Below are positions 32,016 through 64,000 of a DNA stretch of 64,000 bases, one piece after another; the stretch's first letter is position 1, and each line of letters starts with the position of its first letter. The position numbers and the translations under genes were made by a program. Source of the DNA: Paragordius varius (lineage: Eukaryota > Animalia > Nematomorpha); assembly GCA_964247055.1 (NCBI GenBank), contig OZ176059.1, positions 3,038,001 to 3,102,000 of the forward strand, given 5' to 3'. The notes below the pieces were generated by a model. That model had not been told where the DNA came from. It saw only the letters and a list, made by a program, of their open reading frames with translations, and ran no database searches.

Positions 32016-32063
<48 letters not shown>

Positions 32064-36997: not shown

Positions 36998-36999
36998 AA

Positions 37000-41569: not shown

Positions 41570-41639
41570 ATCTAAACGGTTTCTTTGAAATTATGTAGAT
41601 TTCTCTCCGTAGAAAACTTTTTTCCGCTGTATGAAAATA

Positions 41640-41930
41640 CAGTAAAATCTGAAATTATACCGATAAAAAGTAAAAATATAAAGACAAATATTTTTTCTAA
41701 AAGCAACCCCATACTTTTAAACCTTAACTTTCTCATATAAATAATATAATTACAATTGTAAAATATATAATTGATTGTATAACCAATATACGCATCAATT
41801 TTATACTTTACAAATTAAAGCAGTTAGTTTTTTTGTTAAAAATATGGTTTAAAAAAGTATGGTGGTCTTTAGAAAAAAAATATTTGTCTCTATATTTTTA
41901 AGTTTTATCCGTATAATTTCAATTTTACTG
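41640..41930. mobile_element. Same MITE family, well-preserved copy
   Basis: TA|CAGTAAAATCTGAAATTATACCGATAAAAAG ... GTTTTATCCGTATAATTTCAATTTTACTG|TA. Confidence 0.8.
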
Positions 41931-42453
41931 TATTTTTCCGGAATAGTGAAGACAAGTCTAAATAGTCGGTAAATGTACCGATATACTTCCAGTTTTATTC
42001 CACCTCTCCTAATGATACTCTTTCATATAAATTGTTGAATGTTTAAAATAAAAAAAACAATTTTTATCATTGTCACGATAAAGCCTCAGAGTAAGGTCAT
42101 GGCCGGATAGGTTTCTGACCCGGTCAGCACAACCCTAGTAATCACCAAAAATTAATATATATATATATATATATATAATGAAAGATTCAGCTCTTAGTAT
42201 AAGATTTTTTAATCCAATCAAAACATGTATATATTATAAACATATTTTTAATATTTAAGAATAATTATCCTTAATCTTTTACATAATTTGACTTTTATAC
42301 TAATAAATGGTTTATTTTTTATAAATAATTAATTATTATATATATATATATATATATATATTATTTAATAAATATATACAAAAATATAATATAAAATAAA
42401 CCATTTGTTAATCATTCATACCACGTTTTATGTTCGGTCCCAATTGAGAGGAG

Positions 42454-45400
42454 ATGACAACAAACACACTTTTGAAAAATCAAAAACAACTCCTGAATAA
42501 AGCAGAAGATTTTGCCGATGAAGTTATATTTATAAATTAATATTTTTTGTAGAAAAATTAAATTTTCTAGAAAAGTTTACTTGAATTTAATTTTTTTAAA
42601 AGTTTCAGTTTAAAATTAATATTAAAGTAATAGTAATTTTTTATTATAAAAAAATGAGTTTTTATATTTGTTTAGGTTATTTTAGTTTATATAGGTTAAT
42701 AATTGAAATTAATATTTTTAAAAATTAAAGTTTTCTAGAAAAGTGTAAATTTAAATTAAAATTATTTCGAAAATAATGAAAAATTGATTAATTATTATAT
42801 TTATTTAAGTTTTTTTGTAATATATATATTTTCTAAAAGATAAAAGTTAAATTAATTTTGAAACCGTAATATTTTTATATATGAATAATATTTAAAAAAA
42901 TTTTAAGAAACCAAAATATAAAATAATTATAAAAAATGGGTTATATTCTAAATTTTTATATAAGTTTTTTTACAATTAAATATATAATAAAATTATAAAT
43001 AATTATATTTTAATACAAATCAAAATAATTAATAATGTTAAATTAAAATCATTATTTAAAGTTTATAAAAAATTGCTATAAATTAATTTTTTATATAAAT
43101 GGTTTTTTATATTAGTTTAGGTTATGTTTTATTTTTTATTAATCATTTATATATTTAAAATAAATAATTATATTTTAATATAAATTAAGTATAATTAATA
43201 AATTATAATTAAAATTAATATAAATTTTCTAGAAAAGTTGTATTTAATAAACCGAAATATAAAATAATTTTCTTATATAAAAATGAATTTTTTATTTAAG
43301 TTTTTGCAATTAAATATATAAAAATAATATTTCTAATAAAAATTATTACTAAAAATTTAAATTAAATAAATTTTGTAGAAAAATTGAAATATTAGGAATT
43401 TAAATTTTCAATATAATAATTTTTAAATTCTGTTTTAATAATTTAGTTTAATTTTTTATATTTAAATTTATTTTAATTATTTATATTACAATTAAATTTA
43501 TTTTTTTTATTATAATTTAAGATTTTAAAAAAATTTTAAAATATAAAATAGTTTATTGGATATTATTATTGTATTATTATTAAAAATATAATTCATATAA
43601 TTTTAGTTATAAATGCAATAAAAATAGTTTATTTTTAATTTATATATATTATTAAATAATTTTAATATATTGTAGAAAAACAAAAAATAGTAAAATTTAA
43701 ATTATTTTTTATTATATTTATAAATTTGAAATATATAAAAAAATATTGTTTTAAGAATATAAAATATATATTTTGTTTGAAATTAACACGAAATATTAAT
43801 ATTAAAATATTTTATTGAAAAAAAAAATAATTTTTCTATTAGTAATTATAGTTTTTTTATTTTTTGAAAGTTTAAATTAAAATAATTTTGGAATGTTCTT
43901 GAAGTTTTTAATATTTTAAATAAAAATTATTTTTATTTATTTTTTATTTATTTATTAAATTTTAAAAATAATTAAAAAAAAATATGTTTAATAAACAATT
44001 TTTAAAATAAAATATTTTAAATAAATTGTTTGTTGAAATTATATTTAAGAAAATATGGATTGTTTTCGAAGTTTTTAATATTTAAATTTATTTCAAAACA
44101 GTTATTTTATAAAACATAATTTTTATAAAAAAAACTTATATATATATATATATATATATTAATAAATATTACTTTTATAACATTTTATTTATTAACTTTG
44201 TTATTCAAATTCGAATTTTTAACTAAAGTTTTTATTTGATATTTTAATTATTTTTTAAATTTTAAATAATATAATAAAATAAATTTTTAATAATCAGCTG
44301 TTTTCGATATATATATATATATATATATCTATATATATATATATATTAAACTCTATATATATTAAAAGTTTGTTTAGTTTATATATTCAAAAAAAATTTA
44401 TAAAAAAAATATAAATATTATTATTTAAAATAAAAATTTAAGTCTTTTCACTAAAAAATAAAATGAAATTTTTAAAAGTTAATTTTTATTTAAAAAGTAT
44501 TAATAATTTAATTTTTAAAAATCATTTGATAAATAATTTATTTTCGTTAAATTTTTGATAAAAGAAATATTAAAAAATATCTTAAATATACTACTAATCT
44601 CCTATGAAAAAAAATGTCCTTTAACATTTCAAGTTGGTCCTTAAAATTTATAAATTTTAATTTAAACATAATTTTTGCATTTATTTTTTTATTTTATTTT
44701 ATTTATTAACCTAATTTTCTTTATTTATTATATACTTATTCATTTAAAAATAAATTTTTTATTTAAAATTCACTTTTTAGTTTCCAACTATTTTTTTTTC
44801 AATCGAACAAAATTATTGACTTTTAAATGTTATTCAATGAAAAAAGTTTATTAATAACCCAGAAAACTTATATATTTTTTCATTTCATGTTAAAATCTTA
44901 TAAATATCTAAAATTATTTTAAAAAATTAATAAAGATATACGGTTTTTCAAGGATTAAAAGTTGATATCGAACTAAAATTTATGTTTAATAGAAAATAGG
45001 TTAAAAACAATAAAATAGATAAAATAAACAAAACAAAAAAGTCAAAGGACTAAATTGAAATGTTCAAGGACACTCTTGAAGTGCAAATGGTATATATATA
45101 TATATATATATATAGTTATTAACATCAAATCTAATATTTTCCCCCAAAACAGCTGATTTTTTATATAAAATAATTATTTTTTATAAAAATTATCATTTTT
45201 TTGCAAATCTTAGCTGGTAGAATGAAAATACCATTGTATAATTTTTCTTTCAAGTTTTATTAAATTTTTCGTGAAAAATCAGATGATCTCGTCAATTTCG
45301 ATATAAATATATATATATATATAAATCTAGTTTTTATTTATCAAAATATTTACCTTTTTCTTTTTTTCCCTAAATAATCTCAGTTGATTTCGCAAGGGAT

Positions 45401-46393
45401 ATTAAAATTGTGAATTTTTTTTAAAATATATCAGTTGATTTCGCAAAGATATATAATTACGCTTAAAAAAATTATCTATTATATCAAATATTATCGTTTG
45501 TTAAAAAAATCAGCTGTGATTTTCTATATAAAATAATAATTTATACATTTTTCTAAATATAAACATTTTTTCCATTAAAAAATACATGAAAAGTCAGCTG
45601 CTGATCATGTATATATACGCCCCCACCATTTTACATAATAGATTTTGCGGCACACCAAACTTTTTTTGCCATATGTTGCACGATTTTACCTTGTTAGTAC
45701 GTTTGTGGAGGATAATAAAAATATTTTAAACTTTATTAAAATACCAACTGAATATTTCTAAACCATAAAGTTATCTTTTGAAAAAAAAAATTAATTAAAA
45801 TTATCATTTTTCCAAAAAAATCAGATATCGTCTATATATATATATATAAATCCAGGTATTTTTTTAAAAATTAAAACTTTTTAAAAATTCTTTGAATATC
45901 AGCTGATCTCGTATATATACGCCCCCACTATTTTACACAATAGATTTTAAGGCACACCAAACATTTTTTGCCATATACGGCGCGTTTTTGCCTTGTTAGT
46001 ACGTTTGTAGAGGATATTAAAAATATTTCTTATATTGAAATATCAGTTGATCTCGTATATATTTTTAAACTTTATTAAAATATTAGGTGATCTCTTATAT
46101 ATTTTAAAACCTTAAAAATTATCCTTTTCAAATAATTATAAATATTATTATTTTGCCCGAAAATTAGCTGGTAGAAATAGCCCGTATTTTTTTAAAATGT
46201 TTTTGTAATTTTATGATAAATCAGCTGATCCCGTATATATACGCCCCCATTTATACAATATAGATTTTGCGTCACACCAAACATTTTTTGCCATATGTTG
46301 CCCGTTTTTGCCTTGTTAGTACGTTTGTGGAGGATGGCCTACGTATGTGGTTTCAATGGGGTGATCAAACTACCTATATGAGTTCATCTTGGG
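42454..46393 (+). CDS. SURF4: Surfeit locus protein 4, 5' part only: join(42454-42522,46264-46393); no exon 3 recognised before the duplication junction
   Basis: [23 protein letters not shown]|[43 protein letters not shown] matches the SURF4/Erv29 N-terminus ([37 protein letters not shown]). Confidence 0.88.
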
Positions 46394-46870
46394 GTAATTT
46401 TTATCCTAAAAATTTGGTTAATCAGCTGATTTTAAGGTTATTAATACAATTTTTGTAAAAAAATGATTAAAAATGGTGAAAAAACAGCTGTTTTATCATA
46501 AAAATTCTTGGAAATAGAATGGGGTGATCAAACTACTTATATGAGTTCATCTTGGGGTAAATTTTTTCATTTTTATTTTAAAAATTAAGAATCAGGTGAT
46601 ATGAAAGTTTTTATATATAATCAGCTGATTAACAGTTTTTTATTGATAATCAACTGATCTCGAACTGATTTTGAATGGAAATTATTTCAAAAAATGAGAG
46701 TTTTAAGAGTTTTTCAGGAATAAAATTTTAAAATAAAAATAAAATCAGCTGATCTGCAAAATTTTTTGATAACAGAAAAAAATTTGAATATATGTTGATT
46801 TGAAATATTTTCAAAAAATGTGGTTTCAATGGGGCGATCAAACTACCTATATGAGTTCATCTTGGGGTAA
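45590..46870 (+). repeat. Tandem echoes of the SURF4 exon 2 acceptor half (45642-45713, 45944-46015) and donor half (46518-46560, 46820-46870)
   Basis: Near-identical partial exon copies with their AG or GGGGTAA splice signals. Confidence 0.85.
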
Positions 46871-46914
46871 AATTTATCATTTTAACATGGCTATTTTCGG
46901 TTAAAAATCAGCTG

Positions 46915-49900
46915 TTCTAGAATTTGGGGAAGTCTTTATTTTTCTGAAATTTTCGGTTTCTTAAACATAAGGAAATGTTTTTAGGACTGAAAATTATGAA
47001 TTTTATTTAAGGTTTTTTTCAAATATTTTTTGGTTAAAAGGTATAAGACTTTAAATTTTTTGAATTCTGGGTGAGTTTTGCTGAAAGTTGAAAATAGAAA
47101 TGTTAATTATGATTGTATTTTGGGTTTAATTTAAGGTTTTTCTGAAATATTTTTGGGTTTAGAAAGTTTGAGAGTCTTTTTTCTGAGTTTTTCTGAAACA
47201 TCAAATGTTTTTAGGATTGAGAATTATTGGTTTTATTTAATTTAAAGTTTTATGAAATATTTTTGGATTAAGAATTTAAAAACTTTTTATTTTTTGAAAT
47301 TCTTGGTAAGTAGTTTTGCTGAAACATTCATTATAAGGTGTTTTTAGGATTGAGAATTATGGGTTTTATTTGTAAGTTTTTTTGAAATATTTTTGGGTTA
47401 AAAAGTTTGAAACTTTTTATTTTTTGAAATTCTGAGTGAGTTTTGCTGAATTTTTTTTTGAAATCAGAAATCTTGGTATTTATAATTGAATTTAAGATTT
47501 ATTTAAGGTTTTTAAAATATTTTTGGGTTAAAAAGTTTGAGACTTTTTTTTCTGAAATTCTGGGTGAGTGAGTTTTCTGAAAGTTTGGAAAATGTTTTTA
47601 GGACTAAGTATTATGGGTTTTATTTAAGGTTTTTTTGCAATATTTTTGGGTTAATATTTTGAGGCTCTTTATTTTTCTGGAATTCTGGGTGAGTTTTGAC
47701 ATTGAGAAATGTTTTTTTTGAAAGAAATGTTAATTGTAATTAAATTATGGGTTTTATTTTAAGTTTTTTTGAAATATTTTTGGGTTAATAAGTTTGAGAG
47801 TCTTTATTTTTCTGATTTTTTAGAAATGTTGAAATATTGGCCAATATTTTTAGGACTGAAAATTAGGGGTTTTATTTAAGTTTTTTTAAAATATTTTTGG
47901 GGGCAGAAAGTTTGAAACTTTTTATTTTTCTGAAATTCTGGGTGAGTTTTCTGAAATATTGGACAATGTTTTTAAATCTCAGAATTATGGGTTTTATTTA
48001 AAAGTTTTTTTTTAAATATTTTTTGGGTTAAAAAGTTTTTGGGTGAGTGGGTTATCTGAAATTTTAGGTGAATTGATTTTCTGAAATATTGGGCAATATT
48101 TTTACGACTGAAAATTATGGGTTTTTTTTAAAGGTTTTTTTATATTTTTTGGTTAACAAGTTTGAGACTTTTTATTTTTCTGAAATTCGTGTGATTTAGT
48201 TTTTTCTGAAATATTAGGAAATGTTTAAGACTGAAAAATATGGATTTTATTTAAGGTTTTTTTGAAATATTTTTGGGTTAAAAGTTTATTTAGTTTTCTG
48301 AAATTCAGATTTTTCAGAAATGTTGAGAAATATTTTTAGGATTGAAAATTTGGGTTTTATTTAAGGTTTATTTGCATTATTTTTGGGTTAAAAAGTTTGA
48401 CAATCTTTATTTTTCTGGAATTATGGATGAGTGGGTTTTCTGAACGTTTTTTTTTCGAAATCAAAAATGATTTTTTGAAATGGTTTTATTTAAGCCCTTG
48501 AAATATTTTTGGGTTAAAAAGTTTGAGAGTCTTTATTTTTCTGGAATTCTGGGTGAGGCATTTTCTGAAATTTTGGGAAATGTTGATTATTATTGAATTA
48601 TGGGTTTTATTTATGGTTTTTTTAAAATATTTTTGGGGGCAGAAAGTTTAATGCTTTTTATTTGAAATTCTGAGTTTTTTTGGAAATCAGAAATGATAAT
48701 TTTAATTGAATTATGGATTTTAATTATAGTAATTTTTAAAATATTTTTTGGTTAATAAGTTTGAAAGTCTTTATTTTTTTGAAATTCTAGGTGAGTTTTT
48801 CTCAAACATTGGGAAATGTATATAGGATTGATTTGAAAAAAATTCTAGGATCTGAAATTAGTCTCTAAGCTTTTGAAGTTAAAATTTTTTGTTTTAAGGA
48901 ATTTGGTGGAAATTACAATATTTTTTGAAAAAAATGCGTTTTTAAACTATTTTTAGGATTGATTTATTTTGAAAAGATATAAATTTTGATATTCTGGGTG
49001 AGTTTTTCTGAAATATTGGACAATATTTAGGATTGATGTTTAAAAAAAATTCTAGGATCTGATATTATTCTTAAAGCTATTGAAGTTAAAATTTTTTGTT
49101 TTAAGGAATTTGGTGGAATTTAGAATATTTTTTGAAAAAAATGCGTTTTTAAACTTTTTTTAGGATTGATTTATTTTGAAAAAATATAAATTTTGATATT
49201 CTGGGTGAGTTTTCTGAAATATTGGGAAATGTATTTAAAGATTGATTTGAAAAATATTCTTGGATCTGAAATCATTCTCTAAGCTTTTGAAATTGAAGTT
49301 TTATATGTTTTAAACCAAAAACGTCTGCTTTTTTAGCCGCCATATTGAACATGTGACGTTAATATTTCATTATGATAAAACATATGATTGGATATAATTT
49401 TGGTAAAATTTAAAATATTTTTTGTATAAAAAACATTTTTATTAAAAATATTTTTAGGAATGATTTTTGAAAAAAATTCTAGGATCTATTATTTTTTAAG
49501 CTTTTGAAATTGAAATGTTTTAAGGAATTGGGTGGAATTTAGAATATTTTTTGAAAAAAATGCGTTTTTAAACTATTTTTAGGATTGATTTGTTTTGAAT
49601 AAAATAAAATTCTGAAATTTTAAGTTTTTGCTCAAAGATTGGGAATTATTTTTAGGATTGATGTTTGAAAAAAATTCTAGGATCTGAAATTATTCTCTAA
49701 GCAGTAATTGTAATTTTGTCTGTTTTGAATTATAAACGTGCCATCACGTGGTGTTGATTCCATTGATGTAAAATCATATGATTTTAAATTTAATTATGGG
49801 AATCTAATTAGGGATTAATTGATTGGTTCTTTTGATTTTTTTAAAAATATTAGGCATCGCGAGGATATGTAATTCAATAATTTTGAGGTTTTAGGGTTTT
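46915..49900 (+). repeat. Second copy of the RPL7A intron 3 T/G-rich array
   Basis: Same unit as 24230-26500, including the AACCAAAAACGTCTGC..GCCATATTGAACATGTGACGTT landmark (25905 versus 49310). Confidence 0.9.
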
Positions 49901-50025
49901 TTTGATTGAGGAAAATAATTTTATTTTTAAAAATTTAAATTACAGTATAAGTATATATTGATAGAAAGTTATTAATTATTTCCGAATATATAACAAAGGG
50001 GGCAGTATTATTGGCTAATAATAGA

Positions 50026-50267
50026 CCATTTATAGTTCAAATTTACCCTTTCGGACAATTCAAATTCACTTTAAAATATAACTAAAATCATTAATAAGAA
50101 ATAAATTCTTATGTGGCAGTATTTATTATTTTTTCTGTATTTTTTAAAACAATTTTTTATATTTTTTTAAGATAAAAAATGAAAATATAAGCAAACTTTA
50201 ATCTTAAAAAATATAATATATTTTTAGAGTAAATTTGAATTTAAGAGTGAATTTGAATTGTAAATGG
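50026..50267. mobile_element. Same foldback MITE family
   Basis: CCATTTATAGTTCAAATTTACCC ... GTGAATTTGAATTGTAAATGG|TA. Confidence 0.65.
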
Positions 50268-50540
50268 TATTTATGCTGATATATTCTTTATAATTTTTTT
50301 GAATACTTTAATATTTAAATTTTAAAACATTAATTCATAAAAGAGTTATTATATGTTTTTAAATTAAATCATCTCTGATATAAAAAAGCCTTATTTTATT
50401 TTAGATGGTAATTTTTTTCCCTTTTAAAATCTGACTAAACTAAAATAAAGTATATATTTATATATATTTTAATTTTCTTTTATACATAAAAAATATATTT
50501 TTCTAATTTATGTTTAAAATTTCATTTTTTTATTATTTAG

Positions 50541-53500
50541 ATGGTCATATTTTTGCCAGCTCTGTGCCGTAAAATGGGAATCCCTTACTGCATTATTAAG
50601 GGGAAGGCTAGGTTGGGAACCTTGGTCCATAGAAAGACTTGTACTTGTGTAGCACTCACCAAAATTAACCCGTAAAAAAACTTTTTTTAGATTTTTTATT
50701 TGTAATTAAGAAGAGAAAATATAAAAGGATTTTGAAACGTTTTTCAAAGGTTGAAAATTGAGTTTTGTATGCTTTTGAAATACGTTTTAAAGCCTTAAAT
50801 TGATAATTTGTTTAAATTAAAATAGTTAAAGATTTGAGAATTCTGGTCCACAGAAAGACTTGTACTTGTGTAGCTCTAACCAAAATTAACCCGTAAAAAC
50901 TTTATAGATTTTTTAAAGTTTTAACTTTAAAGTTGAATATTATTTAAAGAATAGCTTACAAAAGTTTTTTCCATTTTTATAATCTAACTTTTTCAAACAA
51001 GATTCACAGCGTTATTATCTCTTAAATTGCTTAAATGGTGCGAGCATGTCAAAAATCGCGGGCTATGTCAATGGATTTTATAAACACATTACTAAATTAA
51101 AAAAAGCTTTGAAAAGTTTTTCAAATGTTGAAAATTGAGTTTTGTATGCTTTTGAAATAAGGCTTAAAAGTATTACGCAAGAATTCCACATGTGTAGCTC
51201 TCACCAAAATTAACCCGTAAAAAATCTTTTTTTAGATTTTTTATTTTTATGATTTGAGGATTTGAAAAGAGAAAATATGAAAAGACTTTGAAACGAAAGG
51301 TTGAAATAAGTTATGTATGCTTTTGGAATACGTTTTAAAGCCTTAAAATGATAATTTGTTTAAATTTTACAATAGTGAGATTATTGATTATAAATAGATT
51401 TGTACATGTGTAGCTCTCACCAAAATTAACCCGTAAAAAATTTTTTTTAGATTTTTATTTCAATATTTGGGAATTGAAAAGTGAAAATACTAAAGACTTT
51501 GAAACGTTTCCCAAAGGTTGAAAATTGAGTTTTGTATGCTTTTAAAATACATTTTAAAGCCTTAAATTGATAATTTGTTTAAATTTTAAAATAGTAAGAT
51601 TATTGATTATAAATAGATTTGTACTAGTGTAGTTCTCACCAAAATTAACCCGTAAAAATTTTTTTGATTTTTTCTTTTTAAGATTAGAGGATTCGTAATT
51701 TCCTGAGAAAATATAAAACAGTTTTTTTAAAATTGAGTTTTGTGTGCTTTTTTAAAGCCTTAAAATGATATTTTTTAGAAATATAAGTGAAATTATTGGT
51801 TTTAAATATATTTGTTTTGTATAGCTTTCATCATAATTATTTTTACGGGTTAAAGATTCGAGGATTCGAAATTTCTTGAAATTATAAAAAGTTTTTCAAA
51901 ATGAGTTTTGTATGCTTTTTAAAGCCTTAAAATGATAATTTGTTTAAATTTTACAATAGTGAGATAATTGATTAATATGTATGTGTTGCTCTCACTAAAA
52001 TTATACCTGTAAAAATAGATTTTTATTTGTAAGATTCGGGGAATTTAAATTTGCTGAGAAAATTATAAATAGTTTTTCAAAATTGTGTTTTGTGTGCTTT
52101 TTTAAAGCCTTAAAATGATAATTTGTTTAAATTACAATAGTGAGATTATTAATTAATTTGTACCTCTGTAGCTCTCATTAAAAACCCGTAAAAATAGATT
52201 TTTTATTTCAAGATTTGGGAATTGAAAAGAGAAAATATAAAAAGACTTTGAAACGTTTTCCAAAGGTTGAAAATTGAGTTTTGTATGCTTTTGAAAAAGT
52301 TTTCAAATTCATATTGGAAACATTCTGTCATTAAATTAATTTGTAAAAATTATTTGGTTTTTTTTTTAAAAAATCTTTAAATTTTTATAAAATATTTAAG
52401 ATTGATTAAGGTTAATTATATGTAATTAATGAGGCTTTGAAACCTTTTTTAAAAGGCTAAAATTGAGTTTTGCAATCTATTTACACTTTCTTAAGATAAC
52501 TATAAAATTAGGTACCAAAATTAACCCGTGAAAATTCTTTAGAGATTTTTAAAGATAAACTTTTAAGTTGAAATTTAATATTAGAGTTGAATATTTTTAA
52601 ATTAATTTAATTATAAAATGTTTATATTATATTTATATATTTTTTATTTTTTCAATACTTTTATATAATTACAATTATTTTTTTAATTAATATAATTAAA
52701 AAACGTTTATATTATATTTATATATTTTATTTTTTTAAATATTTATTTTAGAGAAGATAGTGCTTCATTAAGCAAATTAACCGAAGTTATTAAAACTAAT
52801 TTCAATGATCGATTTGATGAGGTTTATAATTTTTAAATTATTTAATATTTATTTATAAATTTATAATTTAATTAATTTTTTATATTATTTAATTTAAATA
52901 ATTTTAAATTGTTTGATTTACATTATTATCTCATTATTTTAAATTAACTTAATATAAAAATAATCAATAAGTTTTAATAGTTTTTTTTCAAATTTTTTTA
53001 TAAATGTTCAAAAAAATAATTTAAATTATTTAATTAATCACAATATAATTTTGAGTTTTTTTTAATTTTTTTTACATTTATTTTTAATTAATTAAAAATA
53101 GATTATTTATAATTAATCTTTTTCCAAAAAATTTTTACTTAAATTTTTTAAATAATTTATTCTTTAATTGAAGATATTTAATAATAAATTTTTATTTATA
53201 CTAACATTTTTTATATTTAATATTTTCAATAAAATATAACATATTTTATAGAATTTTATTATATTAATTAAGTAAACATTTTTAAATTAAATAATTAAAA
53301 TTTAATTCTATATTTTATTTTAATATTTTAAAAAATAAATTAATATATATTAATAGATCAAATTTTCATTTTAATATTATAAATAATAATTATATTTTTA
53401 ATAAAAAATTATTAAATCATTTTATTCTAATATTTTAAATATTAATATAAATTTAAATTATTTAAAAATTATTTTTTTTAATAAAATATTTTTTTTAAAA

Positions 53501-54055
53501 AATAAAAATATGATTATTCATAGATCTTATTTCCAATGTTTTAAATATAAATAATATTATATTTCAATAAATTTATATAAATATTGATATATTTTTAAAT
53601 ATTTATCAAAAAATAATTATTAATTAATTTTATTTAAATATTTTAAATTATTAATGATATTCACTATTTTTTTTAATATTAGAAAATATATAAATAGATG
53701 TTTATTTTTTATAAAATTATTTTAAAAATATGATTTTTTAACTTTAATATTTTTAATATTATTATTTTAATTAATATATATAATTAATATATTTTTAATT
53801 TTTATTTTAAAAAAATTATAATAAAGTTTTTAATTTAAAAAACATTACATTATTAATATAATTATATTTATTTTCAATTTTATAACAATTATATATATTA
53901 ATATATTTTTTTCAAAAAATAATTAATTAATTTTATAAAATATTTTTTAGATCCGTAGACATTGGGGAGGCGGGAAGCTTGGCGCCAAATCTGAAGCCAG
54001 ACTTTCAAAAATTGAAAAAGCAAAAAATAAGGAACTTTTGAAAAAGCTGGGCTAA
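50541..54055 (+). CDS. RPL7A: Second RPL7A 3' half: join(50541-50671,52752-52821,53951-54055); no exons 1-3 of its own
   Basis: Encodes the same peptide as exons 4-6, with intact splice sites and stop; 21 nucleotide differences, none changing an amino acid. Confidence 0.85.
50672..52540 (+). repeat. Exon 4 donor-echo array, second copy
   Basis: TGTGTAGCTCTCACCAAAATTAACCCGTAAAA-like units near 50843, 51190, 51400, 51620, 51980, 52160 and 52515. Confidence 0.85.
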
Positions 54056-54059
54056 ATAA

Positions 54060-54296
54060 AATTTAATTTTAATAAATAAATTAATAAATTTAAATAATTT
54101 ATATTTATTTATATATTTTATTTAAAAATATTTCATAATATATAAAAATATTTTTTTAAGAAAAAAAATTGAATTTCAAAGATTGAAAAAAAATAAGGAA
54201 CTCTTGAAAAAGCTGGACTAAATAAAATTTAATTTTAATAAATAAATTAATAAATTTAAATAATTTATATTTATTTTATTATATTCATTTACTTAA

Positions 54297-54327
<31 letters not shown>

Positions 54328-54700
54328 ATTTATTTAAAAATATAAATTTATTATTCAATAAAAAATAAAAAAGTTTTGAATTTGAAAAAACAAAAAATAT
54401 TAAAGCAAAAAATAAGGAACTCTTGAAAAAGCTGGGCTAAAAAAATTTATTAATTTTTTATTTTAAAAAAATAAAATAAATTTAAATAAATTAAAATAAT
54501 TTATATATTTATTTATTTTATTTAAAAATAATATATATATATAAAATTATTTTATTTATAATGAAATATTAAGGATTTTTTAATAAAATTGAATTTTAAA
54601 GATTAAAAAAAAATAAGGAACTTTTGAAAAAGCTGGGCTAAAAAAAATTTATTTTTTATTTTATAAAAAAATATAAAATAAATTAATAAATTTAAATAAT

Positions 54701-54731
<31 letters not shown>

Positions 54732-55040
54732 TTACTTATTTTGTTAAAAAAAATGTTTATAAACATAAAACAGTTTTGAATTTTAAAAAAGATTGTAAAA
54801 GCAAAAAAGAAACTCTTGAAAAAGCTGGGCTAAAAAATTATTCATTTTTATTAAAAAATATTAAATAAATTTAAATATATATATATGTATATTATTTAAA
54901 TAATTTATATATATTTATATATATATTTTATTAAGAAAAATATTAAGGATTTTTTATTCAAAAAAAGTTTTGAATTTTAAAAAAGATTGAAAGAAACAAA
55001 AAATAAGGAACTCTTGAAAAAGCTGGGCTAAAGTAAAAAA
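54060..55040 (+). repeat. Stop-codon-region echo array, second copy
   Basis: AATAAGGAACTCTTGAAAAAGCTGGGCTAA-like units near 54180, 54400, 54600, 54790 and 54985. Confidence 0.85.
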
Positions 55041-56547
55041 TTTATTTTTTATTCAAAAATATAAAATAAATTTAAATAATTTTATATAAACATTATTTAA
55101 ATATATATTTTTTATATAATATTTCTAAACAAAAATTAAATATTTTTTAAAAAAATTGAAAAAAACAAAAAATTAGGAAAACTTAGAAATTAGGGACTTT
55201 TAAAAAAATGGGTTAATTAAAATTAGATGGGTTTTGGTTTTGACAAATTTGCTACTCTTTAAGAAATTCGGAAAAAGAAAATCTAAACTTTGTATATTTT
55301 TTTAATATTGTCAACGAAAACGAATATTTTATGTTAATATAATAATTTGAATTCTCGTAAAATTTATTAAATTAAACTATAAACCAAAATTTTTATTAAA
55401 AACTTATTACCTTTTCGTGTTTTTCACTTATGTGTTTTAGTTTACCTTTTGTGGTAATTTATATACCAGAGCACAATTTTGTAAATAAAAAGTAAGCTTT
55501 TAAAAGTTATTTTAGGTAAAATTTAATTATCAAACATTGTTTTCCTGTATTATCAAATAAAAAGGCTGACATTTTCTACATTCTGATTTCTAGATAAAAT
55601 TTGGACAGCTGCAAAACACGATTGAACAAACAGCTGATAAGAAAATCTAAATAAATCTAGTTTTTTCTGGTAAAATGGGGTCTGAAAGCATTTTAAAGTT
55701 AATTATTTACATTTTCGCATAAATTACATTTATTTGCGGAAATGATTTTTTTAAAGTTTGCGATGACGTTTTTTTATTACAAAATCTTTCTAATGTGCTT
55801 AAAATGCTAAATAAAGCATATTTTAAATTTGGCTTAATACCTCAAGTACTTTTTAAGATATTCAAATTTTTAACACTTCGATTCAATTTTGGGTATCTAA
55901 ATACCCCAGACTAAATTTAAGTTAGGATTTTCAAAAAACTACTGAAGGAAACGGTCCCAATTTAAATTTATGTTTCTATCCAAATGAAAATTATAGAAAT
56001 ATGCCAAAATATCTAAATAAAACCATTTTTATTTTACAAATTTTTTGCAAAATATCGTCTTCATCTCCAGGGGCGTACCGAGGGGGGGGCAAGGGGGTGC
56101 ATCATGCCCCGGGCGCCGTTATTTAGGGGCGCCTAAATGATTATTTTAATATGCAAAAATAATAAGAACTTAATAATATTTTTCAGCAATTAGGTAAAAA
56201 TCCCTAAAATATATACTCTATATATTCACCTAATTAGTACCATAAAACAGAATGACTTAACATTGTTGAGAGTGGAAAAAGAAAAATATGATAGATTTTA
56301 ATAATTGATAATTTTGCAATATCAAAAGCCAGAAAAATATTACATAAATATTTTTACTCTTAGTTGCTTTTTTCCTTTCCAAGTGATAAAATCTTCATAT
56401 AAAATATTTTATTAAATAAAATGCATTATATTTCTGTTTATGTATTGCAAAATTCTCCTAGATTTACAATTATTTTTTAAATCATTTTTGTTCGCCATTA
56501 TCATAAGATCAATTCAATATATGCAACAACATTATTTTTATATATAA

Positions 56548-56585
56548 CTAGCGAAAATCTCCCCGTGGAAGTCCTTCGGACTTCC
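56548..56585 (-). mobile_element. Helitron-like 3' terminus
   Basis: On the minus strand an 8-bp GC-rich hairpin (GGAAGTCC-GAA-GGACTTCC) lies 15 nt before CTAG|T. The 5' end is not identified. Confidence 0.55.
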
Positions 56586-56699
56586 GGGTGGGAGGGAGGC
56601 GCTATTTGAAATAAGTATTTCGAAACATTATTTAATAGCTATGATCTGATAAAATTTTAAAACGGTGCATTCATACTATATTGTTTACTTGTGCCAAAC

Positions 56700-58965
56700 G
56701 GTCTCATACCTAGGGCAAAAAATAGATTTATAATTATTTTTGTGGACTTTGTTTTTTGAAAAAAAATGGCATTTTATGGGGGGAGCGGTTAAATATAGGG
56801 CCTAAATTAAAAAAGCGAGACGACCATGTTCGGCGCAATCGAAAATGAGTAAACAAAAATCACATTTGAAATATGGTTCAACACGTTCTCCGGAAGATTG
56901 TCTCAAAGACACGATTTTTGTGGACTTCTGTTTTCAAAAAAAACCGTTTTTTACACGGGGTGCCCGAACTGGGGGCCTATTTCAAAAAAGGGCGAAGCTA
57001 TTGTCGGGGCATTTATTAATGATTATATTTTTTCGATGTTTGGATTCGAATGGGTCTACCGGTTTTTCGAAAACAGATCACAAAGCCACCACTTTCCATT
57101 TTTATAAATATATTTCCATATTATAGAATTTATTAGAATATTTATGCAATTAAAAATGAATAAATTTACTTCATATAGATCAGGGCTTCTTAAACTTTTG
57201 TAATTCCCGACGCCATTTATGAGAGCGAGTTTCTCAACGACCCCAACAATTCACGCTTATAAATTTTGTTGATTATATTTATCAGGATTATTTCGGTTTT
57301 AAGAGATTTACATAATTAAATCTACATTTTTTTATAAATTTCTTTAACATCTTCTGATTCATAGTAAATTTATACAAGATATTATAATAATCGGTGGACT
57401 TTTTAAAGGAAAGAATGATGTTATACAAATTCGCCATAATGTGTTTAACTGAACTCGTATGGCTTCTTAATGGCAAATATTTGGAATCATCTTACCATTT
57501 ATGGGGTTTCGAAAAAATACCTCAACACTAAATTATTGTTGTAAGATGGCGTATTTTTAGGGCATAAAAGCCACAAATTAACGGCTATAAAAAACACCTG
57601 ATTTTTTTATCTAGTTACGGAATAAATTTCAAGGTTTTAATGAGCTCATATGCCTTCATAATTTTGTGTAAATTAGCTCCAAAACAAAGCAATTTTTATA
57701 TAGTGGACCAGCTTTTGGCGGGTACTCCTAACCCAGGGCAGGTATAAAAAAGCGCTGGTTAAAATTTTTGCCCTCATATGGGGATTATCTTGAATGGAAT
57801 TCATTGTTCCTATTAGACTCATAGGTTTTCTGAAATTTCGCTCCAAAGGCATGCTGTATATAGATTGGACACAGTTTTACGCGGGTAGCTTCTAACCAGG
57901 GCAACAAAAAAACGCTCAATTAAATTTTTTGCCTTAATTCGGGTAATACCTGGAATCATGATTGATTCCATATGCTCTCATGGTGCCCCAAAACCAAAAA
58001 GTCATTCTATGGTGGCGCATTTTTTCAGGGCAAGGGCCTAATTAAGGGGCTCTACTCAAATTTTTGACTTTACGGGTAATATTTCAGGCCTATATTACAC
58101 TTATATGGCCTGATAAGTTTTTTGAAAATTAACTTCTAAACAACGCAATGTCGATATGGTGGCGCAGTTTTAGGCGAGTAGCTCCTTACCCAACAGCTGA
58201 TAAAAAAACCCTTGATTAAAATTTTCGTTTTTACGGAGAATACCTAAAATCATTATTGATTCCATATAATCTCATTAGTTTTTGGAAAAATTGCCTTAAA
58301 ACTAAAAACCATTCTATAGTGGCGTATTTTTCAGGGTGTGAATAAAATTCGTACGACCTAAATTTTTGCCTTGTTATGGGTAATATTTTAACTATTGAAC
58401 TCATATGGCCTGATAGGTTTTTTGAAATTTAGCCCCAAAGGCACCCTATTTCCTTATGATGAGGCAATCTTTAGCGGGATCTCCTTACCCAGCAGCTAAT
58501 ATAAAAAACGCTCGACTAAAATATTTGCCTTTTAACAGGGAATACGTGGAATCCTTATTGAATTTTTAGATCCTTATTGAATTTTTAGAGTCTCGTACCT
58601 TGGGCGAAATATAGATTCAAAAAATAATTTTTATGTTTGAAAAAAATGGCATTTTACGGGGGGAGCGGGTAAAAAGGGGGCCGAAATTAAAAAAGCGAGC
58701 CGACTATGTTCGGCGCAATTGAAATAAAAAAAAATATATGTGAAATCGAATGGTCCAACACGTTTTCAGGAAAATTGTCTCAAAGACACGATTTTTCAAA
58801 AAACCCATTTTTTACACGGGGTGGGCCCGAACTGGGGGCCTAATTAAAAAAAAGACGAAGCTATTGTCGGGGCATTCATTAATGATTATATTTTTTTCTG
58901 GATATGAATGGGTCTACCGGTTTTCCGGAAACATACAAAGCCTCATTTTCCATTTTTATAATCAT
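56700..58965 (+). repeat. Pair of about 400-bp direct repeats (about 56700-57120 and 58590-58965)
   Basis: Shared GGGGGAGCGG..AAAAAGCGAG..ATGTTCGGCGCAAT..GTCTCAAAGACACGA..CCCGAACTGGGGGCCTA..GCTATTGTCGGGGCATT..ATGGGTCTACCGGTTTT. Confidence 0.8.
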
Positions 58966-59054
58966 ATATATTTTACAAGTTAAAACATTTTTTGTTCAAT
59001 TTTAATTTTATCACTCGCGACCCCAAAAGGGGTCGCCTTAGTTTAAGAAGCCCT

Positions 59055-59055
<1 letters not shown>
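57181..59055. mobile_element. Inner hAT-type element
   Basis: ATATAGAT|CAGGGCTTCTTAAACT ... AGTTTAAGAAGCCCTG|ATATATAT: 16-bp perfect TIR, 8-bp flanks with 1 mismatch. Confidence 0.8.
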
Positions 59056-59106
<51 letters not shown>

Positions 59107-61320
59107 GAATTTATATGACTGTGCTGTCTTATCTATGGTGTTTAGGTTACAACGTTTGTATTTTTTTACTATATTGCATTATTGGCTTTTTTAAAAAAAA
59201 AGGGGGGGGGGCGCCATAAAATTTTTATGCCCCGGGCGCCGCAAATGCTCGGTACGCCACTGTTCATCTCATTTTAAGGGTAAAATTAAAGCTAATTTTT
59301 TTTTAAATTACATGTATTTTTGATAGAAATAGAAAAAGCGGTTTATTATTTATTATTTTTAAATTTTACCATTAAACACATGTCACGTTGACTAAATTTT
59401 TAGCTTTCGGTTTTAGCTTAAAATAAGTAATATTAAGTATTTTTAAATAAATTTTTTTATATACTTCGGTTTATTAATATTATATAAGTGCAAAGTTTTG
59501 CCATGGTTTCGATTCCTTCCATATTTTTTAAAAATTTTTATTTTAAACAGGCCTGGGGTATTTAACTACCCCAATTTGAACGAAGGACTAAAATGAATGT
59601 GTTGTATCCAAGTTTTAATACCTCTGGTGTGCAAAACTACCTCATATAAATCTGTTAAATATATTCAGAATTTATATGTATATAATAAACTTTTGCGTGT
59701 AAAAATCACAAAAAATAAATTGAAAAGGAGTAAATTCATATAAACAGATTTACAATGATAAAATAAAATATTTTGATGCAAAAATCCCATAATTAAGGAA
59801 TATCATTCTCAAATATTAGTAAAATTTAATCCAGCTGTTTTTTATTTTCAAGGTTTTACCTTTTTAAAAGTCAGGAGACTTTTAAAGTTAAGACTGTAAT
59901 CAGCTGTTTTTATTAATTATTAAGAAAGAACTTAAATATTTTGAGACTTACTTTATCTCAAGGTTTACTTCGTTAAAAGTTATGTGTTTTACAGTTAAGA
60001 CTGTAATCAGCTGTTTTCTTAATAATTTAGGAAAGAACTTGAATATTTTGAGACTTACTTTATCTCAAGGTTCACTTCGTTAAAAGTCAGGTGTTCTATC
60101 GTTGAAGAGTGAAATCAGCTGTTTATATAAAATTTAAGATCGACCTTTGAAAATTATATACTCAGCTGTTTTGTCTTCGAAGTTTTATTTCTTTTAGAAT
60201 TTGAAAGTTTTTTTAAAATTGGAAACTGTAATCCTATTATTTGCTTGGCGATATAAAACCACCCCAGAAGATTATAACATTGTTAAATATAGTCAAAAAA
60301 ATCGATTAAAAACGTTGAAAAGACAAAACTTTTAAAATTTTTTGTTAAAATAATAATTTGTATTCTCGTAAAATTTTTTAAATTCAAACTATATCCAAAA
60401 CTTTCGATATATGAGAGCATCTTTTCAATGGATTAACTAAAACAAAAAAAATATTAATAAGATTAATTAAAATAAAATTTGAAAAATATATAATTATAAA
60501 TTATGATAACAAACAAAATGAGAAAAAACAATAACATATGGACATCACTTTGCATTTTTTTTGTTATTATAATTTATAATTATATATTTTTTCAATTTTG
60601 TTTTAAATAATCTTTTTATTATTATTTTCTTTTGTTTTAGTTAATTCATTGAAAAAGATATTCTTATGTATCGAAAATTTTGGATATAGTTTGAATTAAT
60701 AAATTTTACGAGAAATATTTATTTTATAATTTTCATTAGAGAACAAGGGGATTGTCGAATAAAAAATAACATTAACTTTGCCCATATAAAAAGATTTACA
60801 AGAAATACTCAATTCATAAGGACTGAAATGTAAAAATATAAAGACAAAATATTTTTTCAAAAGACATCCAACCCCATACTTTTTAGGAAACCTTAATTTT
60901 TGATCTAAAATATATTTAAATACAATCTTTATGTTCATAATTGATTGTTCTACCAATTTACAATGCTAAATTTATAATTTGCAATTTAAAAAAATCAGTT
61001 ATTAATTTGAAAAAATCAAGATCTTAAAAGGTTGTCATTTGAAAAAATATTTGTCTTTATTTTTAAAGTTTTGTCCCGTATAATTTCAATTTTTACTGTA
61101 AAATGGTAAATTTTAAAACAAATACTTAATTATTTCGATAAACTATTTAAAAATAAATCTTATTCCTTTGTCATCACATTAGGTCGGACCCATTTTAGTT
61201 CAAGCGTTAGCCTTAAAAATAAATTCTGCAATTATAAATAATTATGGATTATTTTAAAAAATATTTTTCGATAAAAAATATTTTGAACAAGTATACGATT
61301 ACCTATACCCTGATCATTTA

Positions 61321-61612
61321 CAGTAAGTTTAGATATTATATACGGACAATACGTAAAAAAATAAGGACAAATTTTTTTTTTACAAAAAAACATCCTTTTT
61401 AAATCTTGATTTTTTTAAATATAACTCATTCAATTAAATTCAGTAAAATATAGAATTGTAAATTGGTAAAACAATCAATTAAATATTTTACAATTTTAGT
61501 CATATAATTTATATGAAAATAATATGGATATCGGTAAAAAAATTGGTTGTCTTTTGAAAAAAATACGTTTCTATGGTTTTAAGTTTTGTCCGTGTAATTT
61601 CAACTTTAACTG
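61321..61612. mobile_element. Same MITE family
   Basis: TA|CAGTAAG...TTTAACTG|TA. Confidence 0.7.
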
Positions 61613-62869
61613 TAAAACTTATTAAATTACAATTAATGATATTTCCTGGAATCATACATTAGGCCTTATAACAAGTTTTAAATCAAAACCATAAGACTTG
61701 GTATTACAAATTTGTTTTATATATACCATTTACAATTAAAATTCATCCCCCTTGAACAATTCAAATTTATTCCTTTCAACAATTCAAATTCACCCTTAAA
61801 CAACACAAATGCACCCTCGAACAATTCAAATTCACCCTAAAAATAACTTATGTGTTTTCGGGCTCATAACCTCATCATTAATAAGATATATATGTTTATG
61901 GCCTAGTTTATTATGTTTGTAGATTGTATTAATTTTAAACGTAAGTTCATTTTTTGAACATACAAAAAATAGAGGTAATTTTTAGTTTTTAAAAACACAT
62001 AATTCATTTGAACGTAAATTTGATTTTTCAAGGGTGTATTTTAAACGGTAAATAACATAAGACAAAACTTGAATTATAAGTAACGAAGAAAAAAAACTTG
62101 CCAATTATATATTTTTTGAAACCACATTGATCCTTAAATTAAATATTACAAATATTTACAAATTTAAAAAATTAATGAATTATTTTTTAATCTTCATCAC
62201 TTATATAGTTGTTTCAACCTATTGCCGTAAGTTTTATTTAACGATTATTGATTTGTTTAAATGATTAGCATCTACTAAACCCTAGTTCTCAAGAGCGCTG
62301 TATATACAAATTTAAGGGGGTAGGTGGTAAGAAAAATTTGGGAAATTCAAAAAGTACAACCAGAAATCAAATTGTAGGATTTCAGATGCAAATTATCTAG
62401 ATTTATCAGTAGGAGAAAAAAATTTTTCAAAATTGCAAAGACAATCGTCTATTGATTGGGACGTTTCATAATATCATAATAAATTTTACATTTTACTTGG
62501 AATTTTTAGAAGACAAGTCGTCGGTAAATGTACCGATAAACTTCCAGATGTATTCGACCTCTCCGATCGATACTTTTTCATATAAATTGTTAAACGTCTA
62601 AATTGAAAAAAATCAATTTTTATCCATGTTAGCGTCAGATTTAGGTCTGACCTAGTAGGTCTTTGACCTGGTCGGCACAACCCTAGTACCAATAAATTAT
62701 TTATTACATGCAAAAGCGAGCGCCTAGTATTAGATTTTTTAATGGAATTATCACATAATTGGGAAATAAAATTATAAAATATTAGTTTAATTCAATGTGT
62801 TTTGGAGCGGTTCTAAAGGTTACACTTTCTAAAACATAAAAGCAAGTGAAATAACCAAGTGTTTCAATA

Positions 62870-63977: not shown

Positions 63978-64000
63978 ATGACAACAAACACACTTTTGAA
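63978..64000 (+). CDS. SURF4: Start of a second SURF4 exon 1 (MTTNTLL...), cut by the window edge
   Basis: GAGATGACAACAAACACACTTTTGAA is identical to 42451-42476, with the same upstream CCACGTTT.ATGTTCGGTCC context. Confidence 0.8.

What the first reader, a model, noticed from the sequence alone, without database searches (positions are those of the whole stretch)
50541..54055. Headless second RPL7A 3' half with 21 silent and 0 replacement differences
Exons 4-6 recur at 50541, 52752 and 53951 with intact splice sites. Counted by hand against the first set: 8 differences in exon 4, 6 in exon 5 and 7 in exon 6 (including TGA>TAA), all synonymous over 306 nt, while the flanking introns are visibly diverged with indels. 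That pattern implies both sets have been under purifying selection as RPL7A, yet no exon 1-3 lies between 46.9 and 50.5 kb. Possible explanations: (a) the single 5' half splices to either 3' half, skipping about 26 kb that includes SURF4 exons 1-2; (b) trans-splicing; (c) a recent rearrangement joining two formerly complete paralogs or alleles; (d) two divergent haplotypes assembled in tandem.
Basis: partly seen in the sequence, partly recalled or inferred. Interest (0 to 1): 0.82.

Follow-up and report, generated by a model that had tools for sequence, protein, structure and literature searches.

The report
Headless RPL7A half from joined alleles
The second, headless 3' half of the ribosomal protein gene RPL7A is real, but it is best explained as the middle of a 20-kb tandem duplication that joined two very different working alleles, so its silent-only differences were probably inherited and do not show that the extra half is used.

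Summary
Exons 4'-6' (50541-50671, 52752-52821, 53951-54055) differ from exons 4-6 at 21 of 306 bases. Twenty differences are synonymous, one is TGA>TAA, and none changes an amino acid. Splice sites are intact, and the window holds no second exon 1-3.

The copy belongs to a tandem duplication of about 20 kb. The duplicated unit runs from RPL7A intron 3 to SURF4 intron 2, and the junction lies at 46929|46930. The result is an intact RPL7A on the left, an intact SURF4 on the right (just beyond the window), and an out-of-frame SURF4(ex1-2)/RPL7A(ex4'-6') chimera in the middle.

A second contig, C11, carries the same locus without this duplication. Its working 3' half differs from C10's working half by 19 silent and 0 replacement changes. 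That is the same pattern the headless copy shows.

Divergence between the two units follows C10-C11 divergence region by region: about 25% over most of the unit, but about 2% next to the junction. Unit 2 also contains patches identical to C11.

The scan has noted similar codon-clean exon copies elsewhere in this genome.

The parts
22592..24159 (+). RPL7A (eL8) 5' half, the only one on this contig. Exon 1 CDS is 22592-22603 (inferred), exon 2 is 22634-22922 and exon 3 is 23849-24159.
   Evidence: Reading of the sequence and frames. Exon 3 matches Pfam PF01248 profile positions 6-45. tblastn finds no other copy in the window. The only other copy in the genome is on C11.
27318..29977 (+). Working 3' half A1: exon 4 27318-27448, exon 5 28981-29050, exon 6 29873-29977 (form alpha, stop TGA).
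   Evidence: Exon 4 matches PF01248 profile positions 48-86.
24200..46929 (+). Duplication unit 1. It runs from RPL7A intron 3 (the start falls in a tandem array, about 24.2-24.5 kb) through exons 4-6, the intergenic DNA and SURF4-A exons 1-2 to the breakpoint in SURF4 intron 2.
   Evidence: Self-BLAST and collinear chain. Three-way alignment of the SURF4 end.
36893..36997 (+). A3, a third, orphan copy of exon 6 (form beta, first codon ATC>TTC, I>F) from a nested duplication of about 5-7 kb inside unit 1. An array of exon-6-end echoes follows at 36949-38300.
   Evidence: Its 300 nt of upstream intron are 94% identical to the intron before C11's working exon 6, against 75-81% for all other pairs.
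42454..42522 (+). SURF4-A exon 1 (start codon at 42454, 23 codons).
   Evidence: Conserved island aligned with unit 2 and C11. It has one synonymous difference from the unit 2 copy.
46264..46393 (+). SURF4-A exon 2, ending in phase 1, with partial echoes on both sides (45640-45715, 45940-46015, 46520-46560, 46820-46870).
   Evidence: PF02077 E=6e-16. It has five synonymous and no replacement differences from SURF4-B.
46929..46930 (+). Duplication junction. SURF4 intron 2 (identical in register to SURF4-B and C11 up to 46929) switches to the RPL7A intron-3 repeat.
   Evidence: Three-way alignment. Only a short imperfect similarity (TTTGGG(G)TTAAAA) lies near both parental sites, with no long shared repeat.
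46930..64000 (+). Duplication unit 2. It continues to window-equivalent 66411, beyond the window end, and SURF4 exons 3 to the last exon follow it.
50541..50671 (+). Exon 4' of the headless half A2.
   Evidence: Eight synonymous differences from exon 4, identical 43 aa, AG/GT intact. PF01248 profile positions 48-86.
52752..52821 (+). Exon 5' of A2.
   Evidence: Six synonymous differences, AG/GT intact.
53951..54055 (+). Exon 6' of A2 (form beta, stop TAA), followed by AATAAA and an array of exon-6-end echoes (54000-55200).
   Evidence: Seven differences from A1, all in the last 46 nt, but only 2 from C11's working exon 6.
48077..48444 (+). Patch in unit 2's intron 3 that matches C11's intron 3 with one mismatch (exact runs of 49, 236 and 82 nt).
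   Evidence: The background identity is 70-80%, where exact runs are mostly 30-60 nt.
51779..51946 (+). Patch in unit 2's intron 4 that is exactly identical (168 nt) to C11's intron 4.
63978..64000 (+). Start of SURF4-B exon 1, cut by the window end. This is the head of the intact SURF4 gene.
   Evidence: The downstream SURF4 exons are at window-equivalent 65.9-75.2 kb.

Best explanation
The headless RPL7A 3' half is the left end of the second unit of a tandem segmental duplication. Unit 1 runs from about 24.2 kb to 46929 (about 22.5 kb). Unit 2 runs from 46930 to window-equivalent 66411 (19.5 kb). The breakpoints lie in RPL7A intron 3 and SURF4 intron 2.

As in any such duplication, the outer genes stay whole: RPL7A exons 1-3 plus 4-6 on the left, and SURF4-B exons 1-2 plus the later exons on the right. 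The middle is a chimera of the SURF4-A head and the RPL7A tail. That chimera is out of frame, so it cannot be what keeps the tail's codons clean.

The two units most likely descend from two different, long-separated working alleles. These were joined by an unequal, microhomology-level exchange between haplotypes, which makes this a 'heterogeneous' duplication. Unit 2 has since kept pairing and exchanging with single-copy alleles.

On this reading the 21 silent differences arose while both 3' halves were parts of complete RPL7A alleles. The extra half has been headless only briefly: less than about 1.3% neutral divergence (95% bound from 0 replacements in 235 sites).

What is shown: the duplication structure, the junction, its absence from C11, the allele-like divergence and the mosaic. 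What is inferred: origin from two alleles, recency, and lack of function.
For: 1. Structure. There is an exact junction at 46929|46930. SURF4 exons 1-2 are present twice on C10, followed by a single set of later SURF4 exons.
2. C11 is collinear with C10 on both flanks. It carries one exon 4 and one SURF4 exon 2, so it lacks this duplication.
3. Control. The working halves A1 vs B1 differ by 19 synonymous and 0 replacement changes (pS 0.290). A1 vs A2 differ by 20/0 (0.306) and A2 vs B1 by 18/0 (0.275). The three are equidistant, so the pattern is ordinary for working alleles here.
4. Unit 1 vs unit 2 divergence follows C10 vs C11 divergence by region. Identity is 68-81% over most of the unit in all three comparisons. 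In the last 1.35 kb before the junction it is 97.3-98.5%, where C10-C11 is also 95-97%.
5. Extra copies resemble working alleles of the other contig. A2's exon 6 differs from B1 by 2 nt and from A1 by 7. C11's extra exon 6 (B2) differs from A1 by 1 nt. A3's upstream intron is 94% identical to B1's.
6. Unit 2 contains a 368-nt patch with 1 mismatch to C11 and a 168-nt exact patch, so exchange with the single-copy gene is recent.
7. The other orphan piece, the SURF4-A head, is equally clean: 6 synonymous and 0 replacement changes.
8. Copies that cannot be exons do decay. Eleven partial exon-4 echoes carry 28 synonymous and 24 replacement codon changes plus stops, and A3 has one replacement. Extra copies are therefore not generally protected.
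9. The mechanism is documented. Unequal crossing-over in heterozygotes joins two alleles in tandem (PMC6121789). A tandem duplication with both breakpoints inside genes makes a chimera (PMC4069613).
Against: - Expression of A2, the reality of the junction in raw reads, and read depth are all untested.
- No single-copy haplotype with an A2-type working half was observed. A2's exon 4 has 5 private silent states and is 12 nt from C11's, so the donor allele is only postulated.
- Whether C10 and C11 are alleles or fixed homeologous regions is not established.
- If the duplication arose at a random time since the lineages split, the chance of seeing 0 replacements in a dead copy is only a few percent. 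The explanation therefore needs the event to be young, or the copy to be refreshed by conversion.
Confidence: 0.55

Rival explanations
1. The second 3' half is in use and is kept by its own purifying selection. RPL7A transcripts that read through the first poly(A) site splice exon 3 to exon 4' about 26 kb downstream, or exon 4' is reached by trans-splicing. Replacement mutations in A2 would then poison ribosomes and be removed.
For: All three exons keep canonical AG/GT, polypyrimidine tracts, the frame and an AATAAA after the stop. Eight changes private to A2 are all silent. There is no indel in 306 nt, while the introns are full of them. Partial echoes that cannot be exons do decay while the full copies do not. 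If the organism's very high diversity reflects a large effective population size (an inference, not measured here), even rare use could be visible to selection.
Against: - C11 lacks this copy and has a different extra set (exons 5-6 only), so no conserved two-cassette design exists.
- Use would need read-through of a poly(A) signal and a 26-kb intron that holds the SURF4-A promoter and exons.
- Both cassettes encode the same protein, so no benefit is evident.
- The orphan SURF4 head shows the same clean pattern, which would need a second special splicing route.
- Working alleles show the same silent-only divergence.
- Exon 4' alone covers only Pfam L7Ae profile positions 48-86 of 95, so a stand-alone product is implausible.
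Confidence: 0.17
2. The duplication is old, about as old as the C10/C11 split, and the headless half is non-functional. It is kept codon-clean by recurrent gene conversion from working copies and alleles, which are themselves filtered by selection.
For: - The mosaic. Patches of unit 2 are identical to C11 (368 nt with 1 mismatch, and 168 nt exact), and patches are 87-92% identical to unit 1, against a 70-80% background.
- The first 94 nt of exon 6 are 97-100% identical in all five copies, while the last 11 nt come in two forms that recombine with two upstream intron types.
- The 97-98.5% identity at the SURF4 end could be a recent conversion tract.
Against: Conversion from A1 on the same chromosome would also erase the silent differences, yet 20 remain, 8 of them private to A2. 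No conversion tract covers exon 4', which is 8 nt from A1 and 12 nt from B1. The reading needs a conversion rate tuned to be high for replacement sites but low for silent ones, unless the donors are diverse alleles, in which case it merges with the best explanation.
Confidence: 0.15
3. Assembly artefact: two or more divergent haplotypes (or individuals in a pooled sample) were joined head to tail, so the true chromosome has a single unit.
For: The layout, with one haplotype ending in SURF4 intron 2 and another starting in RPL7A intron 3, is what a false tandem join of overlapping haplotigs would give. No raw-read check was possible. The only runs holding most of the stretch are probably the source sample.
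Against: - C11 is already a complete second version of the locus and differs from both units, so a diploid has no third haplotype to misplace.
- The genome holds no leftover contigs with a third RPL7A 5' half or a third SURF4 3' part.
- The junction has no long shared repeat that could mislead an overlap assembler, and no gap.
- Two further nested duplications with other breakpoints exist at this locus, A3 on C10 and B2 on C11.
Confidence: 0.06

Closest known systems
Heterogeneous gene duplications (ace-1 D alleles of Culex pipiens and Anopheles gambiae)
   Same: A tandem duplication puts two already divergent alleles of one locus on one chromosome, probably by unequal crossing-over in a heterozygote. 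The copies are therefore dissimilar from birth (PMC6121789; PMC5137868).
   Different: In ace-1 both copies are complete, expressed and favoured by selection, and they differ by a functional replacement. Here the second copy lacks exons 1-3, encodes the same amino acids, and nothing shows that it is used. The donor allele has not been observed as a single copy.
Partial tandem duplications that create chimeric genes (Drosophila population surveys)
   Same: Both breakpoints fall inside different, parallel genes. This leaves two intact parental genes outside and a chimera of the downstream gene's 5' end with the upstream gene's 3' end in the middle (PMC4069613).
   Different: The chimera here is out of frame: SURF4 exon 2 ends in phase 1, RPL7A exon 4' starts in phase 0, and a stop follows after 10 codons. 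The two units are about 25% diverged rather than near-identical.
Tandem exon duplication with alternative or mutually exclusive 3' exon sets
   Same: Duplicated exons with intact splice sites lie downstream of a single 5' part (general knowledge of the class; no paper was read for it here).
   Different: The two sets encode identical protein. They are separated by a poly(A) signal, 16 kb of intergenic DNA and another gene's promoter and first exons. The arrangement is absent from the second version of the locus, and no transcript evidence exists.
Exon-end 'echo' arrays noted throughout this genome by the scan
   Same: Copies of exon sequence differ from the working exon mainly at silent sites. 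The same is seen here at exon 4, exon 6 and SURF4 exon 2. Earlier notes are s1-252850, s1-277265 and s1-368126.
   Different: This case is a 20-kb segmental duplication with complete exons and splice sites, not a 200-bp intronic array. The small echoes here are measurably decayed (28 synonymous vs 24 replacement changes), whereas the large copy is not.

Membership tests
Ribosomal protein eL8/RPL7A (Pfam PF01248 Ribosomal_L7Ae) | Match to the L7Ae domain above Pfam's cut-off | tested here: met
   Exon 3 scores 31.9 bits (profile 6-45). Exons 4 and 4' each score 40.8 bits (profile 48-86). The cut-off is 22.1 bits. All database relatives of the exon-3 frame carry PF01248 and are named L7a.
Ribosomal protein eL8/RPL7A (Pfam PF01248 Ribosomal_L7Ae) | A complete gene: the headless set has its own exons 1-3 | tested here: not met
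   There is no second exon 2 or 3 in the window. The genome has only two, on C10 and C11. The breakpoint splits the L7Ae domain.
Heterogeneous tandem duplication (two alleles joined) | Head-to-tail copies with one novel junction | tested here: met
   The junction is at 46929|46930. The units are collinear.
Heterogeneous tandem duplication (two alleles joined) | The duplication is absent from other versions of the locus | tested here: met
   C11 has a single exon 4 and a single SURF4 exon 2. Whether C11 is an allele or a homeolog is not established.
Heterogeneous tandem duplication (two alleles joined) | Each copy matches an allele that also exists as a single copy | tested here: inconclusive
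   Partial support: A2's exon 6 is 2 nt from C11's working exon 6, there are 368-nt and 168-nt near-identical patches, and A3's flank is 94% identical to C11. However, A2's exon 4 is 12 nt from C11's, and no A2-type single-copy allele is available.
Heterogeneous tandem duplication (two alleles joined) | Divergence between copies equals allelic divergence, region by region | tested here: met
   pS is 0.306, 0.290 and 0.275 for the three pairs. Identity is 68-81% over most of the unit and 95-98.5% at the SURF4 end in all comparisons.
Chimeric gene from a partial tandem duplication | Both breakpoints inside parallel genes | tested here: met
   The breakpoints are in RPL7A intron 3 and SURF4 intron 2, both on the + strand.
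Chimeric gene from a partial tandem duplication | An open chimeric reading frame | tested here: not met
   A phase 1 donor meets a phase 0 acceptor, and a stop follows after 10 codons.
Alternative 3' exon cassette of one gene | Transcripts joining exon 3 to exon 4' | not testable with these tools
No cDNA-derived protein of this organism is in the protein collection.
Alternative 3' exon cassette of one gene | The arrangement is conserved in the second version of the locus | tested here: not met
   C11 has exon 4 once and exons 5-6 twice, with other breakpoints and the alpha and beta forms in the opposite order.
Assembly artefact (haplotypes in tandem) | The junction is not spanned by reads, or depth over the units is half that of the flanks | not testable with these tools
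   No reads could be laid. Indirect evidence is against it.

The most novel reading that the evidence does not exclude
RPL7A in this animal runs two interchangeable 3' cassettes. Exon 3 is spliced either to exon 4, or to exon 4' across 26 kb that contain another gene's promoter and first exons. Both routes give the same protein, and each is held by purifying selection. This would be one large-scale case of a genome-wide system in which spare exon copies are actually read.
Probability: 0.13. Interest if true: 0.75.

Novelty: new member of a known kind. Interest (0 to 1): 0.4.

Why it matters
This case shows that "silent-only divergence" between a gene piece and its orphan copy is not proof that the orphan is functional when haplotypes are extremely divergent. 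Here two working alleles already differ at about 30% of silent sites. The needed control, working allele against working allele, was available in the same assembly and gives the same numbers.

The locus also gives a fully resolved example of a heterogeneous, partial tandem duplication with an exact junction. It has two nested sister events and patches of recent exchange. It can therefore calibrate the many codon-clean exon echoes that the scan reports in this genome.

If the extra half turned out to be spliced, that would be a very unusual way to build an essential ribosomal protein mRNA.

Tried and rejected
1. Read evidence. The look-up of sequencing runs listed probable source runs and possible RNA runs. 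The Rfam scans and local window scans were run beside them.
2. cDNA route. The 191-aa open frame around C11's exon 3 was used by reference to reach full-length L7a proteins. The best identity was 52%, so no transcript-derived protein of this organism is held.
3. A hidden second 5' half. None was found in the window or in the genome beyond C10 and C11.
4. An in-frame SURF4-RPL7A fusion as the reason for clean codons. Rejected, because it is out of frame.
5. A stand-alone product starting at the ATG that opens exon 4'. Rejected as implausible, because it would carry only half of the L7Ae domain.
6. Intron-hosted snoRNAs or other RNAs as a reason to keep the copy. No Rfam family reaches its threshold.
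7. A neutral, old pseudo-half. Rejected, because about 36 replacements would be expected and 0 were seen (numbers).
8. Literature on intronic exon-end arrays. One word search found nothing relevant.
9. One megablast pass missed the identical patches. They were confirmed by exact string matching.

Exons were searched one by one by reference, and codon counts were made locally on whole codons of each exon.
Full report
OBSERVATION

The window is G000:C10:3038001-3102000 of a 110.6-Mb, 44-contig, very AT-rich animal assembly.

RPL7A (eL8) lies on the + strand:
- Exon 1 CDS 22592-22603 (inferred)
- Exon 2 22634-22922
- Exon 3 23849-24159
- Exon 4 27318-27448
- Exon 5 28981-29050
- Exon 6 29873-29977

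Pfam places the L7Ae domain across exon 3 (profile 6-45) and exon 4 (profile 48-86).

Exons 4-6 recur at 50541-50671, 52752-52821 and 53951-54055. Lengths, AG/GT sites and the split codon are unchanged. The copies differ at 8, 6 and 7 positions, 21 of 306. Twenty changes are synonymous, one is TGA>TAA, and none is a replacement. With S=65.3 and N=234.7 sites, pS is 0.306 and dS about 0.39. The chance that all are silent under neutrality is about 6e-14.

No relative of exon 2 or 3 lies elsewhere in the window. The whole assembly has only two 5' halves.

WHAT THE COPY BELONGS TO

Self-comparison shows that about 24.2-36.4 kb is collinear with 46.9-62.5 kb at 68-81% identity.

A Pfam SURF4 scan of the assembly shows SURF4 exon 2 at 46264-46393. 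It appears again just beyond the window (window-equivalent 65.9 kb), followed by one set of later SURF4 exons. SURF4 exon 1 is also present twice, with start codons at 42454 and 63978.

A three-way alignment fixes the junction. The first SURF4 copy matches the second copy and contig C11 base for base up to 46929. It then switches into the RPL7A intron-3 repeat.

This is therefore a tandem duplication whose unit runs from RPL7A intron 3 to SURF4 intron 2. The outcome is:
- RPL7A intact on the left.
- SURF4 intact on the right.
- A SURF4(ex1-2)/RPL7A(ex4'-6') chimera in the middle.

This is the textbook outcome when both breakpoints fall in parallel genes (PMC4069613).

The chimera is out of frame. 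The donor is in phase 1, the acceptor in phase 0, and a stop follows after 10 codons. It cannot explain the clean codons.

Near the junction the two parental sites share only a short imperfect similarity, with no long repeat.

THE SECOND LOCUS AND THE KEY CONTROL

Contig C11 (1.87 Mb) carries the same gene order on its minus strand. It is collinear with C10 on both flanks at 80-93% identity, but only about 72-77% within the RPL7A introns.

C11 has one exon 4 and one SURF4 exon 2, so it lacks the 20-kb duplication. It has its own 3.4-kb duplication of exons 5-6. C10 also has a nested third exon 6 at 36893.

Codon counts for the 3' half:

| Pair | Synonymous / replacement | pS |
|---|---|---|
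| A1 vs A2 | 20 / 0 | 0.306 |
| A1 vs B1 (the two working halves) | 19 / 0 | 0.290 |
| A2 vs B1 | 18 / 0 | 0.275 |

The headless copy is no more and no less different from the working copy than two working versions are from each other. Silent-only divergence is simply what working RPL7A alleles look like in this genome.

SIGNS THAT THE EXTRA COPIES COME FROM, AND EXCHANGE WITH, WORKING ALLELES

1. Exon 6 exists in two forms that differ in its last 11 nt. C10's working copy is alpha and its extra copies are beta. C11's working copy is beta and its extra copy is alpha. A2 is 2 nt from C11's working exon, and B2 is 1 nt from C10's working exon.
2. The 300 nt of intron before orphan A3 are 94% identical to the intron before C11's working exon 6. 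All other pairs are 75-81%.
3. Unit 2 contains a 368-nt patch with one mismatch to C11's intron 3 and a 168-nt exact patch in intron 4. The background there is 70-80% identity, with exact runs mostly of 30-60 nt. Unit 1's introns have no such runs.
4. Unit 1 vs unit 2 divergence follows C10 vs C11 divergence by region. It is about 20-30% over most of the unit. In the last 1.35 kb before the junction it is only 1.5-2.7%, where C10-C11 is 3-5%.
5. The orphan SURF4 head is equally clean, with 6 silent and 0 replacement changes.

One assumption accounts for all five points: a recent unequal exchange between two divergent haplotypes, followed by continued pairing of unit 2 with single-copy alleles. 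Joining of two alleles by unequal crossing-over is documented for ace-1 'heterogeneous duplications' (PMC6121789; PMC5137868).

IS THE EXTRA HALF PROTECTED AS SUCH?

If A2 had been a dead copy since a duplication as old as its divergence, about 36 replacements would be expected and 0 are seen. An old neutral pseudo-half is therefore excluded (numbers).

If A2 is dead, it has been headless for less than about 1.3% divergence (95% bound).

Extra copies at this locus are not generally immune to decay. Eleven partial echoes of the exon-4 end in the introns carry 28 silent and 24 replacement codon changes, including stops. They still show an excess of third-position differences (7, 17 and 35 by codon position). 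Orphan A3 has one replacement.

This fits young snapshots that then decay. It does not exclude selection on the complete copy.

WHAT COULD NOT BE DONE

Expression, the junction in raw reads, and read depth are therefore untested.

The protein collection holds no transcript-derived L7a of this organism. No Rfam family is hosted in either copy.

VERDICT

The alternatives are real use by long-range or trans-splicing (about 0.17), an older copy cleaned by conversion (about 0.15) and an artefact (about 0.06).

This is a new member of a known kind, a heterogeneous partial tandem duplication. It sits in a genome where the scan has repeatedly noted codon-clean exon copies on other DNA.

Noticed in passing
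window 23430-23850; 27449-28600; 50672-52300; 36949-38300; 54000-55200; 45640-46870: Every exon edge examined is flanked by tandem 'echoes' of itself, each including the splice site. Intron 2 holds five copies of the acceptor plus the first 7 nt of exon 3. Intron 4 holds arrays of the exon-4 end plus donor. Arrays of the exon-6 end follow the last exon 6 copy of each unit. SURF4 exon 2 has 5'-part echoes upstream and 3'-part echoes downstream.
   Followed up: partly
L019:1993-2020 (window-equivalent 65993-66020): In the intact SURF4-B copy, a deletion of about 170 nt fuses exon 2 to what is the first downstream echo in SURF4-A and C11. A former echo now serves as the working exon end. This is a direct example of echo and exon swapping roles.
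   Followed up: partly
window 46264-46325 vs L019 (window-equivalent 65907-65970): The two SURF4 exon 2 copies differ at five silent sites, all in the first 60 nt, which is the part covered by upstream echoes. The flanking non-coding DNA differs by only 1.5-2.7%. Some of the variant states also occur in the upstream echo near 45690. Silent sites seem more diverged than their surroundings, as if echoes feed variants into the exon.
   Followed up: partly
window 29873-29977, 36893-36997, 53951-54055; C11 copies: The first 94 nt of exon 6 are 97-100% identical in all five copies, while the last 11 nt occur in two forms (ending ...TTAGGATGA or ...CTGGGCTAA). Together with two types of upstream intron end, all four combinations exist, which points to recombination or conversion inside exon 6.
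   Followed up: partly
window 23930-24080 (exon 3): RPL7A exon 3 carries a stretch rich in K, S, A and T (roughly residues 20-62 of the 102 aa counted from window 23854) ahead of its Pfam L7Ae match, which begins at residue 63. All five amino-acid differences between the C10 and C11 proteins lie in this stretch.
   Followed up: partly
window 55880-59606: Unit 2 holds a 3.7-kb, GC-richer (about 31%) insertion that is absent from unit 1. It has an internal direct repeat of about 450 nt (56701-57151 and 58590-59001, 77% identical). It may be a mobile element and was not identified.
   Followed up: no
window 22592-46393 and beyond: RPL7A and SURF4, two members of the vertebrate surfeit gene cluster, are direct neighbours on the same strand in this invertebrate-like genome.
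   Followed up: no
C11:1268090-1271608 (minus strand): The second version of the locus has its own 3.4-kb tandem duplication of RPL7A exons 5-6. It is again free of replacement changes (9 silent differences between its two sets). Its breakpoints differ from both duplications on C10.
   Followed up: partly
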